IMG/VR virus record: IMGVR_UViG_3300045970_000794
Location: 248,001-312,000 of that record
DNA: 64,000 bases
Reading direction: 5' to 3' (one strand)
The translations under genes and the position numbers were made by a program. Shown here in pieces: positions 17,337 to 19,795 of this stretch. Below the pieces are notes generated by a model that saw only the letters and a list, made by a program, of their open reading frames with translations, made no database searches and was not told where the DNA came from. Position 1 is the stretch's first letter. Every line of letters starts with the position of its first letter.

Positions 17337-17348
17337 CAAAAAAAAACG

Positions 17349-17365
17349 TCTGGAATCTCCAGACG
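17349..17365. repeat. 17-bp direct repeat, copy 2 (probable terminator hairpin)
   Basis: CGTCTGGA-ATC-TCCAGACG between convergent genes. Confidence 0.9.
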
Positions 17366-17373
17366 CTTTTAGT

Positions 17374-17849: not shown

Positions 17850-18533
17850 TTATATTCGTGAAACATCATACCCCGAAAATTTTACGAGATATGATTCTAT
17901 TAAACCTCTATTCTTTAATTTCATATCAGAATTGAAGTATCTCTTAATTGAGCCACCACCACCTAAGTGTGCGGCTGCTAATATGCCAGATTCAGTTATA
18001 AGGATTCCATTAAATATCTTACCGCAATAAGTTGAAATGTAATCATATAAATTTCTTTTATTAATTTTAATTAGTTTAACCATCGCCGCATCTTGTTCAA
18101 CATCAGACCAACATTTTGAACGTAAACTATCTGGTGATTTTGCAAATTTATCCCGAAATAATTTAGCATCATTAATATTGGTACATATCCCAACACCAAC
18201 CAATGTACTAGGTCCAAATTGATATTTACCAATATGACCATTTCGGCTAACAGTAGTATAATCATTATGAGATTCACTATGACCAATAGCATCAATAAAT
18301 TTTTTAATTGGTTTATTTGTAGTAACCGATACAGTTACTCGATTCATGCTATCTAATTTACTACTAACCTTATCTTGTAATAATTCAAATGTTTGAATTC
18401 GTTTTTGTGCACCCTCAATTTTTTCAACTCTAGACTCAATATTAACTAGTTTTATAACAATAACAATTGTTATTGCTATTACTGTGACGAAAAAAAGAAC
18501 TAATAATTTTTTTAATGTTAATAAATTTACCAT
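17850..18533 (-). CDS. Lysozyme-like / lytic-transglycosylase-like protein with N-terminal membrane anchor
   Basis: AIGHSES..Y..GHIGKYQFG..L, ITESGILAAAHLGGGG; ATG at 18533 followed by a TM segment. Confidence 0.65.
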   Translation of the reverse strand: MVNLLTLKKLLVLFFVTVIAITIVIVIKLVNIESRVEKIEGAQKRIQTFELLQDKVSSKLDSMNRVTVSVTTNKPIKKFIDAIGHSESHNDYTTVSRNGHIGKYQFGPSTLVGVGICTNINDAKLFRDKFAKSPDSLRSKCWSDVEQDAAMVKLIKINKRNLYDYISTYCGKIFNGILITESGILAAAHLGGGGSIKRYFNSDMKLKNRGLIESYLVKFSGYDVSRI

Positions 18534-18595
18534 TTGTTTTAGTTTTAGTTTATAGGCAAAATTAATAAAAATTTTTGTAACTACCAAATATTTTA

Positions 18596-19078
18596 TTACT
18601 TTTTTTGTCCTATGTACTCATGACTGAAGCAAATCCTCTCATTATCAGCGTAATGGTTTTTGAAAATATTTAAATGCTTAATATCAGTTCTAAGTTTTTT
18701 ATTTTTTGATGTTGGTTTCCATAGTGGTGACATTGTTCGATAATACCCCATTCTAGGATGTGCAGTCCTAGAGAAATAACGTTTTCCTTCATCTAAATGT
18801 ATTTCACCTATCGCATCTGAGAATCTAACACCGATACCCATACCTTGAAAATCTGGTAAAATAACTGTTCTATGTCCCCTCCAAGCTTGCTTTAAATAAC
18901 CATTCGGCATTGCTATTACCGAACCGAATGCGACTAATATGCCATTCCATAAACCAACGAAACATCTTGATGATTTATGTATATCATCCCTTAAATAGTG
19001 ATGTTCTTTAAACATTTCCCACGTACTGCGGTCTGTGCTATAAATTTCGAGATTGATTTCTGGTCGGACAAAAAAAAA
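18596..19078 (-). CDS. GNAT (Mom-like) acetyltransferase domain in the -1 frame of the ABC ATPase
   Basis: RPEINLEI..WEMFKEHHYL, RTVILPDFQGMGIG acetyl-CoA motif; frame open from the T run at 19070-19078. Confidence 0.75.
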   Translation of the reverse strand, partial: FFFVRPEINLEIYSTDRSTWEMFKEHHYLRDDIHKSSRCFVGLWNGILVAFGSVIAMPNGYLKQAWRGHRTVILPDFQGMGIGVRFSDAIGEIHLDEGKRYFSRTAHPRMGYYRTMSPLWKPTSKNKKLRTDIKHLNIFKNHYADNERICFSHEYIGQKK

Positions 19079-19677
19079 CCGTCATACATTTCACCAGTAT
19101 TCGTATTAATCACCCAATCTGGCTCCAGCCAGTCTAGTATATCCTCATGACATGTTGCTAGGACTAATCCTGTGATATTGGCTTGCTTCACATATCTAGA
19201 TAGTGCAACTGAAGCAGCTTTTGCTACATTACGGTCTACCACTGATGTAAATTCATCAATAACAGCATTATTTTTAACTCTTCTAGCTAATTCAGCTCGG
19301 AATTTTTCACCGTTTGATAATACATGATGTGGTTTATGCCATGCTGGTATTGAATTTAATCCAACAGCACCTAATTTATTTAGAGCATCATCTTCAGTTT
19401 CGAAATGAGATACGATGGCTTTATTTGGGTCCCAAGTTAATATTTCTTCAGTACCAAATTCATGAAGTAATGTAGTTTTACCACTACCACTAGCACCATA
19501 AATAACACCAATCTTAAAATCTTTTGGGATTGTAGGTTTTTCCCATGGATGAAATTTTGACTTACCATTAAACACTAAATCAAAAGCTTTTGATGAAGCT
19601 TTAGTATAGCTATCAATTTCAACAGTTGATGTTAATGGTTCAGATTTTCTAACTAATTTACCAATTATTTTTTCCAT
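18991..19677 (-). CDS. ABC-type ATPase (soluble, GNAT-associated)
   Basis: GASGSGKTT, LSNGEKFR signature, IDEFTSVVDR, ATCH; GFFL slippery tract near the end. Confidence 0.85.
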   Translation of the reverse strand: MEKIIGKLVRKSEPLTSTVEIDSYTKASSKAFDLVFNGKSKFHPWEKPTIPKDFKIGVIYGASGSGKTTLLHEFGTEEILTWDPNKAIVSHFETEDDALNKLGAVGLNSIPAWHKPHHVLSNGEKFRAELARRVKNNAVIDEFTSVVDRNVAKAASVALSRYVKQANITGLVLATCHEDILDWLEPDWVINTNTGEMYDGFFLSDQKSISKFIAQTAVRGKCLKNITI

Positions 19678-19795
19678 GTACAAATATACTTGATTAAAAG
19701 CAATAAAGCAAGTAAAATAATAAAAAAAACAAGAATAGCTCAGAGCGATATTATCACCCTAAGCTATGTCATTATTATAATTAAAAAGTATGCTA

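What the first reader, a model, noticed from the sequence alone, without database searches (positions are those of the whole stretch)
18596..19677. ABC-ATPase and Mom-like GNAT joined by a -1 slippery site: a recoded DNA-modification candidate
Seen: GGT TTT TTT TTG (T9 at 19070-78). The -1 frame reads FFVRPEINLEIYSTDRSTWEMFKEHHYL and runs into the GNAT, so a protein-like segment lies upstream of the first Met. Predicted products are the ATPase alone and a fusion of about 360 aa. Established: Mu Mom is a GNAT-fold adenine modifier, and ABC-ATPase/GNAT fusions are proposed phage base-modification enzymes. Inference: frameshifting limits the dose of a toxic modifier used against restriction.
Basis: partly seen in the sequence, partly recalled or inferred. 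Interest (0 to 1): 0.75.

Follow-up and report, generated by a model that had tools for sequence, protein, structure and literature searches.

The report
Recoded phage ATPase–acetyltransferase gene
Two neighbouring open reading frames in a 362-kb pond phage are really one gene, read in two ways at a conserved run of nine T's, giving an ATPase alone and an ATPase–acetyltransferase fusion; related phages use other slippery sequences at the same spot.

Summary
On the minus strand an ABC-type ATPase ORF (19677..18991, 228 aa) contains GGT TTT TTT TTG (T9, 19078..19070). From that run the -1 frame is open into a GNAT domain ending at 18596.

It is neither an assembly error nor two separate genes:
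- A phage family profile covers both halves colinearly.
- The conceptual -1 product (360 aa) aligns without gaps to natural in-frame fusions.
- All 120 closest protein clusters (64-100% identical) keep the same split.
- 83 of 84 related contigs with the same flank carry exactly T9.

Close relatives replace T9 at the same codon with A_AAT_TTT followed by a covarying 10-12 bp hairpin 6 nt downstream, or with T_TTT_TTA. Other lineages use A_AAA_AAG, A_AAG_GGC, C_CCT_TTT plus hairpin, A9 or T9. The ATPase tree needs at least 7 changes of state.

This is programmed -1 recoding at a domain boundary. For T9 I cannot tell ribosomal slippage from RNA-polymerase slippage, because no RNA data were available.

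"Mom-like" is not supported: this is a generic GNAT of the known ABC-ATPase–GNAT family, predicted but untested as a DNA-base acylase. I found no published report of the recoding.

The parts
18991..19677 (-). 0-frame ORF. It encodes the ABC-type ATPase-only product: 228 aa plus TAA, made of a folded ATPase (residues 1-201) and a 26-27 aa trans-frame tail.
   Evidence: ABC motifs are visible in the sequence: Walker A G61-T68 (GASGSGKT), signature L120-E124 (LSNGE), Walker B D141-E142, H-loop H177; these are invariant in A1. Matches phrog_11143 positions 8-194 at 9.7e-65. AF2 model: residues 1-201 are confident and 202-228 have pLDDT below 50.
19072..19078 (-). In-phase slippery heptamer U_UUU_UUU (GG U UUU UUU UUG).
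   Evidence: The same codon position carries A_AAT_TTT or T_TTT_TTA in close relatives.
19070..19078 (-). The full T9 tract (U9 in the mRNA). It is also a candidate RNA-polymerase slippage site.
   Evidence: T9 in 26 of 30 distinct clade junctions, 28/28 viral contigs and 55/56 homologous metagenome contigs. PMC5009743 on runs of 9 A or T.
18596..19072 (-). -1 frame segment (158 codons plus TAA) that encodes the linker and GNAT domain of the fusion. Fusion CDS = join(19677..19072, 19072..18596) = 360 aa.
   Evidence: Matches phrog_11143 positions 200-352 at 8.4e-39, and Pfam Acetyltransf_1. Aligns without gaps, 1-360, to the natural fusion L036 at 62.8% identity. GNAT motif A QGMGIG lies at 18830-18847.
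18994..19069 (-). Region where both frames are open. Synonymous-site variation is suppressed here. The first 18 nt (19052-19069, GTCCGACCAGAAATCAAT) are nearly invariant.
   Evidence: third-position entropy is 0.63 here against 1.11-1.15 in the flanks, and none of 158 control windows is as low. For the first 18 nt the value is 0.33. Based on 14 sequences found by protein similarity.
19013..19015 (-). First ATG of the -1 frame. Gene callers use it as the start of a 139-aa 'GNAT' ORF; it is probably an internal Met, not a start.
   Evidence: Homology to fused proteins extends 20 codons upstream. L005 has TTG/Leu at this position. In the fusion model, GNAT strand beta1 (residues 210-215) lies upstream of this Met.
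19735..19767 (-). Terminator-like hairpin followed by a T-rich tail, upstream of the gene. It marks the likely start of a new transcription unit.
   Evidence: a consensus scan only.
17342..17370 (-). Terminator-like hairpin after the two downstream ORFs (245 aa with a weak match to a baseplate-hub/tail-lysozyme family; 151 aa unknown). It marks the likely end of the unit.

Best explanation
The two ORFs are one recoded gene of the phage ABC-ATPase–GNAT family.

Standard decoding gives a 228-aa ATPase-only protein (S), which ends 26 codons after the T-run in a disordered trans-frame tail. A programmed -1 shift on GG U_UUU_UUU UUG, exactly at the domain boundary, gives a 360-aa ATPase–GNAT fusion (L) that reads ...MYDGFF-FVRPEINLEIY...

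I take ribosomal tandem slippage on U_UUU_UUU to be the main route. The reason is that sister phages carry bona fide -1 frameshift cassettes at the same codon. RNA-polymerase slippage that adds one U on the U9 tract would give the same protein and may contribute.

Shown: the anatomy, the conservation, the frames, and the fold of the fusion.

Inferred: that both products are made, and by which mechanism. Also inferred: because ABC ATPases work as dimers, the shift efficiency would set the S:L ratio, and therefore how many GNAT domains each ATPase dimer carries. The enzyme's target is unknown; the Iyer/Aravind proposal of acylation of a DNA base is untested.

My odds that this is a selected recoding site of either mechanism are about 0.9. 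My odds that the ribosomal route is the main one are about 0.6.
For: 1. One gene. phrog_11143 (357 positions) covers the ATPase ORF at positions 8-194 and the -1 frame at 200-352. tblastn with the fused PX29 protein gives two HSPs in frames n and n-1. The 360-aa conceptual fusion aligns 1-360 without gaps to the natural fusion L036.

2. Conservation of the split. All 120 best clusters (64-100% identical) are about 229 aa and end in the same [TNSV]I[TI]I tail. Of these, 113 read GFFL-type, 5 read GNF and 2 read G[SD]FLN. Among 30 distinct junctions, 26 are T9, 2 are A_AAT_TTT and 2 are T10 in frame.

3. True frameshift cassettes at the same codon. Six A_AAT_TTT relatives each have a 10-12 bp stem that starts 6 nt after the heptamer. 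Stem pair 2 is A-U, C-G or G-C, and stem pair 8 is C-G or U-A. T_TTT_TTA occurs in L200 and L201.

4. Independent lineages shift by -1 at the same junction using other sites. These are A_AAA_AAG plus hairpin (Enterococcus phage 9184), A_AAG_GGC (Oenococcus), C_CCT_TTT plus a downstream fold of -32.6 kcal (90-nt window; L140), A9 (L138), T9 (L141), a G5 run (Thomasclavelia TR-TP1) and GGTTTTTC (Streptococcus/Lactococcus). The tree needs 10 changes of the -1 state by parsimony, and well-supported branches force at least 7.

5. Frame usage. Third-position variability follows the 0 frame upstream and the -1 frame downstream. In the overlap the second position of the -1 frame is the least variable and synonymous sites are suppressed.

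6. Structure. The fusion model has pLDDT 91 and pTM 0.86. GNAT beta1 is encoded upstream of the first Met. The 0-frame tail is disordered and is not conserved between distant lineages.

7. Stoichiometry idea. Among 150 representatives, 57 are ATPase-GNAT, 48 are ATPase-ATPase-GNAT and 39 are ATPase only.
Against: - There is no RNA or protein evidence. No RNA run was listed, and the DNA runs are held only as contigs, so read-level heterogeneity of the T-run could not be seen.
- The T9 class, the window included, has no conserved 3' hairpin: z-scores are near 0 and the alifold result is trivial. This weakens the ribosomal reading for this class.
- Nine T's are conserved where seven would do, and two other lineages carry A9 or T9. 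That is what RNA-polymerase slippage would select.
- U_UUU_UUU was much less shift-prone than A_AAA_AAG in E. coli constructs (PMC5009743).
- Three in-frame T10 variants sit inside the clade, so the split is not obligatory.
- The S:L dimer idea is untested.
Confidence: 0.6

Rival explanations
1. The same two products arise, but by transcriptional slippage. RNA polymerase (host or phage) reiteratively adds one U on the U9:A9 hybrid. Ribosomes then translate the U10 mRNAs normally into the fusion and the U9 mRNAs into the ATPase alone.
For: - A run of 9 A or T is the length at which bacterial RNA polymerase slips efficiently, as in Thermus dnaX (PMC5009743).
- The run is exactly 9 in 83 of 84 related contigs, although a heptamer would suffice for ribosomes.
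- Independent lineages have T9 (L141) and A9 (L138).
- The T9 class has no conserved 3' stimulator.
Against: - Close relatives use A_AAT_TTT plus hairpin or T_TTT_TTA at the same codon. These runs are too short for polymerase slippage and are classic ribosomal signals.
- A conserved 18-mer lies downstream of the run, not upstream, whereas the RNA structures known to promote slippage act upstream of the run (my own knowledge).
- No RNA data exist either way.
Confidence: 0.3
2. DNA-level phase variation. Slipped-strand mispairing switches T9 (off) to T10 (on) in the phage population, so only a subpopulation carries an active fusion gene.
For: In-frame T10 variants exist inside the clade. L160 is sister to the T9 member L038, and L035/L036 are nested among T9 members.
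Against: - T9 is found in 83 of 84 contigs that share the flank, from many samples. A contingency locus would show more length variation.
- The A_AAT_TTT and T_TTT_TTA relatives cannot phase-vary, yet they keep the same split.
- The window's run assembles as T9 at word depth 56.5.
Confidence: 0.04
3. Two separate proteins are made: the ATPase ORF, and a 139-aa GNAT that starts at ATG 19015 by coupled or internal initiation.
For: The ATG is present in 26 of 27 T9 sequences, and gene callers annotate two genes in the deposited phage records and the assembly gene calls seen here.
Against: - Homology to fused proteins runs 20 codons upstream of the ATG without a gap.
- The Met is equally conserved in natural fusions (L035, L036), so it is an internal residue.
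- L005 has Leu at this position.
- A GNAT starting there would lack strand beta1.
- Slippery heptamers in phase at the same spot in many lineages would be left unexplained.
Confidence: 0.04
4. It is an artefact or decay: a homopolymer sequencing or assembly indel, or a recent frameshift mutation that made a pseudogene.
For: Homopolymers are error-prone, and a single extra T would restore the frame.
Against: - The same split is found in 120 of 120 clusters down to 64% identity.
- The run length is identical in 83 of 84 contigs from many projects.
- An independent assembly agrees.
- The -1 frame downstream still shows purifying selection.
- Variants with non-homopolymer slip sites keep the split.
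Confidence: 0.02

Closest known systems
Phage lambda G/GT tail-assembly chaperone -1 frameshift (and its relatives across tailed phages)
   Same: A phage gene in which a conserved in-phase slippery heptamer lets a fraction of ribosomes shift -1 near the end of a short ORF. This makes a longer fusion next to the short product. Different phages use different slippery sequences at the same position.
   Different: The gene family and function differ: an enzyme (ATPase + GNAT) rather than a structural chaperone. Many family members are plain in-frame fusions. A homopolymer of nine is the commonest site here.
dnaX tau/gamma recoding: E. coli -1 frameshift on A_AAA_AAG plus hairpin; Thermus thermophilus transcriptional slippage on a 9-mer run
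   Same: One gene gives two P-loop ATPase isoforms that share the N-terminal ATPase and differ at the C-terminus. The same outcome is reached by ribosomal frameshifting in one lineage and polymerase slippage on a 9-mer in another (PMC5009743). The Enterococcus phage 9184 homologue uses the same A_AAA_AAG plus hairpin.
   Different: In E. coli dnaX the shifted product is the shorter one; here the shifted product is the longer fusion. No upstream Shine-Dalgarno-like stimulator was looked for or shown here.
ABC-ATPase–GNAT fusion family (phrog_11143; JGI name 'ABC-type ATPase with predicted acetyltransferase domain'; Iyer et al., predicted DNA-base acyl modification)
   Same: The window's gene is a member. 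Both halves match the family profile colinearly. The ABC motifs and GNAT motif A are intact. The modelled fold matches uncharacterised cellular two-domain proteins at TM 0.84.
   Different: The family was described as a fusion. Here, and in several other lineages, the fusion exists only through a -1 shift. In my searches I found no paper that mentions this.
Bacteriophage Mu Mom (Pfam PF25680)
   Same: GNAT superfamily fold, phage-encoded, and linked in the literature to DNA base modification.
   Different: No family-level similarity. Mom has no ABC ATPase. It uses Gly-tRNA(Gly) and has an HTH-like insertion (PMC13219725). Mom expression is controlled by Com, not by frameshifting.

Membership tests
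Programmed -1 ribosomal frameshift cassette | Slippery X_XXY_YYZ heptamer in phase with the upstream (0) frame | tested here: met
   GG U_UUU_UUU UUG at 19078..19072.
Programmed -1 ribosomal frameshift cassette | The -1 frame continues a conserved protein directly from the shift site | tested here: met
   Colinear match to phrog_11143. Gapless alignment of the 360-aa fusion to natural fusions. Codon-position pattern.
Programmed -1 ribosomal frameshift cassette | The site and the frame arrangement are conserved among diverged homologues | tested here: met
   120 of 120 clusters; 30 distinct junctions; independent lineages.
Programmed -1 ribosomal frameshift cassette | Stimulatory RNA structure 5-9 nt downstream of the heptamer | tested here: not met
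   No conserved structure in the T9 class, the window included. The feature is met in the sister A_AAT_TTT class (6-nt spacer, 10-12 bp stem, covariation) and in L140 and L132. A stimulator is common but not obligatory.
Programmed -1 ribosomal frameshift cassette | The trans-frame protein is detected, and the mRNA sequence is unchanged | not testable with these tools
   No RNA run was listed and there are no proteomic data.
Transcriptional slippage site | Homopolymeric A or T run of about 9 or more in the coding strand | tested here: met
   T9 at 19070-19078. The length is fixed at 9 in 83 of 84 contigs. Threshold taken from PMC5009743.
Transcriptional slippage site | mRNA population heterogeneous in run length, relative to the DNA | not testable with these tools
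   No RNA runs. The DNA runs are held as contigs only.
ABC-ATPase–GNAT fusion family (phrog_11143) | N-terminal ABC nucleotide-binding domain with Walker A, signature, Walker B and H-loop | tested here: met
   GASGSGKT, LSNGE, IDE and H177 in P0001; invariant in A1. Foldseek top hits are ABC nucleotide-binding domains.
ABC-ATPase–GNAT fusion family (phrog_11143) | C-terminal GNAT domain with motif A (Q/R-x-x-G-x-G/A), colinear with the family profile | tested here: met
   QGMGIG in P0002. Pfam Acetyltransf_1 at 21.0 bits against a cut-off of 20.7. phrog_11143 positions 200-352. GNAT structures among the Foldseek hits.
ABC-ATPase–GNAT fusion family (phrog_11143) | Acyl modification of a DNA base (predicted function) | not testable with these tools
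   This is only a published prediction (PMC7824862). The gene neighbourhood in this window is uninformative.
Mom family (Pfam PF25680) | Sequence match to the Mom profile | tested here: not met
   Mu Mom scores 2.4e-75. L036 and the window's GNAT give no Mom hit at E up to 1. hhalign probability is 0.6%.
Mom family (Pfam PF25680) | HTH-like insertion in the GNAT fold, needed for momylation (PMC13219725) | not tested
   The insertion is described. The model was not superposed on Mom.
Phase-variable contingency locus | Run-length polymorphism among close relatives or within a population | tested here: not met
   Among contigs that share the flank, 83 are T9 and 1 is T10. Two further T10 members have other flanks. 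Within-population reads were not available.

The most novel reading that the evidence does not exclude
Within one enzyme family, two different recoding mechanisms have been swapped repeatedly at the same codon. These are RNA-polymerase slippage on 9-mer homopolymers (T9 or A9) and ribosomal -1 frameshifting on heptamer-plus-hairpin cassettes. Both would serve the same purpose: a fixed ratio of GNAT-less and GNAT-bearing ABC subunits. Those subunits would assemble into an asymmetric dimer (two ATPase domains, one GNAT), the same unit that cellular relatives encode as a single ATPase-ATPase-GNAT chain, and this dimer would acylate phage DNA.
Probability: 0.25. Interest if true: 0.8.

Novelty: new member of a known kind. 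Interest (0 to 1): 0.62.

Why it matters
1. Annotation. In the deposited phage records and assembly gene calls examined here, this gene is listed as an 'ABC transporter ATP-binding protein' followed by a short hypothetical or GNAT ORF. The real product is a fusion enzyme, and the family is large: 5148 proteins at E <= 1e-5 in one search.

2. Recoding biology. At least seven changes between split and fused states are needed, and about nine kinds of slip-prone site sit at the same domain boundary. This makes an unusually rich natural comparison of slippery sequences. It includes close relatives that differ as 'homopolymer of nine without a hairpin' versus 'heptamer with a covarying hairpin'. That makes the question of ribosomal versus polymerase slippage directly testable.

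3. Function. The S/L isoform pair and the natural ATPase-ATPase-GNAT tandems suggest how this uncharacterised, predicted DNA-modifying enzyme is built. They also say which construct to express when looking for the modification.

Tried and rejected
- RNA evidence: no RNA run was listed for the gene. The two DNA runs are stored as contigs, so they confirm the consensus T9 but cannot show heterogeneity.
- Complex prediction of the ATPase-only product with a natural fusion: no verdict, because the score was not specific against the controls. It counts neither for nor against binding.
- Downstream RNA structure in the T9 class: RNAalifold and per-sequence z-scores found nothing conserved. An upstream pairing with ACUGGU is not supported, because those bases vary while the downstream partner does not (by eye).
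- Gene neighbourhood in the window: thymidylate synthase, KTSC, a ClpB-like protein, DUF5661, an RNaseH-like protein, an LRR protein and an ADP-ribosylglycohydrolase give no functional clue.
- Mom relationship: rejected at family level.
- Sequence search of solved structures: only generic ABC and GNAT hits.
- Literature: searches for a frameshift in this family found nothing in the held library. This is not proof that none exists.
It was rerun without them.
- The first entropy analysis included loci that had been picked by an exact 15-mer just downstream of the run. I repeated it on 14 sequences found by protein similarity only.
- Slip sites in the Streptococcus/Lactococcus phages (GGTTTTTC, G_AAA_AAG or a C-run) and in TR-TP1 (a G5 run) remain candidates only.
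Full report
**What is there**

The window belongs to a 362,102-bp virus record with direct terminal repeats. It comes from a pond metagenome, has 30% G+C and carries 40 tRNA genes. Both features of the finding lie on the minus strand.

- An ORF runs from ATG 19677 to TAA 18993..18991 and encodes 228 aa.
- Near its end it reads GAC GGT TTT TTT TTG TCC, with nine T's at 19078..19070.
- Read from the T-run, the -1 frame gives FFFVRPEINLEIYSTDRSTWEMFKEHHYL... and stays open for 160 codons to the stop at 18598..18596. Its first ATG is only at 19015.

**Is it one gene?**

Yes, on four lines of evidence.

- The phage family profile phrog_11143 (357 positions) matches the ATPase ORF at positions 8-194 (9.7e-65) and the -1 frame segment at positions 200-352 (8.4e-39).
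- Pfam finds only generic P-loop/ABC and GNAT signals.
- tblastn with the fused protein of Aeromonas phage PX29 gives two colinear hits in the window, in frames n and n-1. Most relatives give a single hit in one frame.
- A tandem -1 slip on U_UUU_UUU predicts a 360-aa protein...GEMYDGFF-FVRPEINLEIY... This aligns residue 1 to 360 without a gap to the natural in-frame fusion L036 at 62.8% identity, junction included (DGFFFVRPEINLEIY against HGFFFKRPSIDIEVY).

**Is it an error, a pseudogene or chance?**

A T9 alone is unremarkable in this genome, which has 41 A/T runs of 9 or more. Only 8 of them lie inside ORFs of at least 120 aa, although such ORFs sum to about 79% of the genome length. The conservation of this particular run, however, is decisive.

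- The 120 best protein clusters are 64-100% identical to the ATPase ORF. Nearly all are 229 aa, and all end in the same tail.
- In DNA, 30 distinct junction sequences from this clade comprise 26 T9, 2 GG A_AAT_TTT and 2 T10. The T10 genes are natural in-frame fusions reading GFFFVRP or GFFFKRP.
- Pattern scans that allow any run length found T9 in 28 of 28 viral contigs and in 55 of 56 homologous metagenome contigs. The one exception is T10.
- An independent Logan assembly, probably of the same sample, reproduces the region exactly at word depth 56.5.
- Upstream of the run, third-codon-position variability follows the 0 frame; downstream it follows the -1 frame. Both halves are therefore under purifying selection in their own frames.

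**Evidence that the shift is programmed**

At exactly the codon where most clade members have GG T_TTT_TTT, others have different slip sites.

- *GG A_AAT_TTT* (six sequences). Each has a 10-12 bp stem that begins 6 nt after the heptamer. The second stem pair is A-U, C-G or G-C, and the eighth is C-G or U-A, which are compensatory changes. This is a textbook -1 frameshift cassette, and its runs are too short for polymerase slippage.
- *T_TTT_TTA* in L200 and L201.

Outside the clade, the same -1 split at the same domain junction occurs with other in-phase sites:

| Phage or locus | Slip-prone site |
|---|---|
| Enterococcus phage 9184 | A_AAA_AAG plus hairpin |
| Oenococcus phage Vinitor-27 | A_AAG_GGC |
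| L140 | C_CCT_TTT, downstream 90-nt window folds at -32.6 kcal |
| L138 | A9 |
| L141 | T9 |
| Thomasclavelia phage TR-TP1 | G5 run (weaker candidate) |
| Streptococcus and Lactococcus phages | GGTTTTTC (weaker candidate) |

On a maximum-likelihood tree of the ATPase domain, the -1 state needs 10 changes by parsimony, and well-supported branches force at least 7. The window's clade has 100/98 support. Its T10 members are nested inside T9 members.

The -1 frame keeps the family's conserved residues (R-P, W, F, HHYL) in every lineage. The 0-frame tails share only the ITI/III ending, which the HHYL codons impose.

**Structure**

An AlphaFold2 model of the natural fusion L036 is confident: pLDDT 91, pTM 0.86.

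- It shows an ABC nucleotide-binding domain up to about residue 200, followed directly by a GNAT domain.
- The first GNAT strand (residues 210-215) and the start of its first helix lie upstream of the Met that gene callers use as a start. A GNAT beginning at ATG 19015 would therefore be truncated.
- The ATPase-only product folds confidently to residue 201. Its trans-frame tail (202-228) is modelled as disordered.
- Foldseek finds ABC nucleotide-binding domains and ordinary GNATs in the PDB. In the AlphaFold DB clusters it finds uncharacterised cellular proteins with the same two-domain fold, at TM 0.84.

**Which mechanism acts on T9?**

Both routes give the same protein.

- *For the ribosomal route.* The heptamer is in phase. 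Sister phages use undoubted ribosomal cassettes at the same codon. Synonymous variation is suppressed in the overlap: 0.63 against 1.11-1.15 in the flanks, with none of 158 control windows as low. The 18 nt after the run are almost invariant.
- *For polymerase slippage.* The run is fixed at nine where seven would do. Nine is the length at which bacterial RNA polymerase slips efficiently (PMC5009743). Two other lineages carry 9-mers. The T9 class has no conserved downstream hairpin. In the window only the Pro CCA and Trp UGG codons could pair; in relatives these form the core of the hairpin.

I put the ribosomal route at about 0.6 and the transcriptional route at about 0.3. Only RNA data can settle it, and none was available.

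**What is the protein for?**

The family is the one that Iyer and colleagues described as a GNAT coupled to an ABC ATPase. They predicted that it makes an uncharacterised acyl modification of a DNA base, and they noted it in a few jumbo phages such as pT24 (PMC7824862).

It is not Mom. Pfam's Mom model and a profile comparison both fail.

Gene context elsewhere is suggestive but not decisive.

- Upstream in Streptococcus and Oenococcus phages and L141: DNA methylase or ParB-like genes.
- Next to the gene in several phages: DNA polymerase.
- Directly downstream in Mu-like Burkholderia and Porphyromonas phages: a PurN-like formyltransferase.

Context in this window is uninformative.

Why two isoforms? 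ABC ATPases hydrolyse ATP as dimers; this is established knowledge of the fold, and the Walker A, signature, Walker B and H-loop motifs are all intact here. Among the 150 best family representatives at 50% identity, 57 are ATPase-GNAT, 48 are ATPase-ATPase-GNAT in one chain, and 39 are ATPase only. A dimer of two ATPase domains carrying one GNAT is thus a common natural unit. A mix of S and L subunits would reproduce it. This is an inference; the one complex prediction I ran gave no verdict.

**Novelty and verdict**

Programmed -1 recoding in phage genes is a known kind of mechanism; lambda G/GT and dnaX are the examples. The ABC-ATPase–GNAT family is also known. I found no report that links the two. 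The deposited phage records and gene calls I saw annotate two genes.

I rate this a new member of a known kind. It has added interest because of the many independent slip sites at one junction and the homopolymer-versus-cassette contrast among close relatives.

The main caveats are these:
- There is no RNA or protein evidence.
- The mechanism on T9 is unresolved.
- The function of the enzyme and of the conserved 18-mer is unknown.

Noticed in passing
L002:1636-1638 (Tenacibaculum phage pT24, LC168164.1): In pT24 the ATPase and GNAT halves are in one frame. An in-frame TGA replaces the conserved Gly of the V-G-F motif inside the GNAT, and the record annotates two 'ABC transporter ATP-binding' CDS. 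It could be a mutation, an error or read-through; I made no claim about the genetic code.
   Followed up: partly
G000:C1:71732-71807 (outside the window): The phage genome carries 40 tRNA genes in a cluster region. They include three tRNA-Phe(GAA) and one tRNA with anticodon CUA, which ARAGORN labels 'Pyl'.
   Followed up: no
window 19052-19069 (minus strand): The 18 nt after the T-run (GTC CGA CCA GAA ATC AAT) are almost invariant at synonymous sites in the T9 class, although no hairpin is conserved there. In A_AAT_TTT relatives the same stretch forms the 5' arm of the stimulatory stem, with Pro CCA pairing with Trp UGG.
   Followed up: partly
L080:1761-2192, L084:2682-3161, L096:2703-3179: In three viral contigs an in-frame ATPase-GNAT gene is followed closely by a second, stand-alone GNAT paralogue of the same family.
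   Followed up: no
L135:2019-2633 (Burkholderia phage phiE255 gp30) and L136:2013-2486 (Porphyromonas phage007a): In two Mu-like phages from different phyla the fused ATPase-GNAT gene is directly followed, with overlapping ends, by a PurN-like formyltransferase. This suggests a conserved two-gene module.
   Followed up: no
G000:C1:214118-214127 (outside the window): An A10 on the plus strand lies inside a 190-aa minus-strand ORF, giving U10 in the mRNA. It is one of only 8 long A/T runs inside ORFs in this genome. I did not examine it for a second slippage site.
   Followed up: no
window 17850-18587 (minus strand): The ORF that starts 9 nt after the GNAT stop (245 aa, with an N-terminal hydrophobic segment) has only a weak match to a baseplate-hub/tail-lysozyme phage family. 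It seems to be co-transcribed with the recoded gene.
   Followed up: partly
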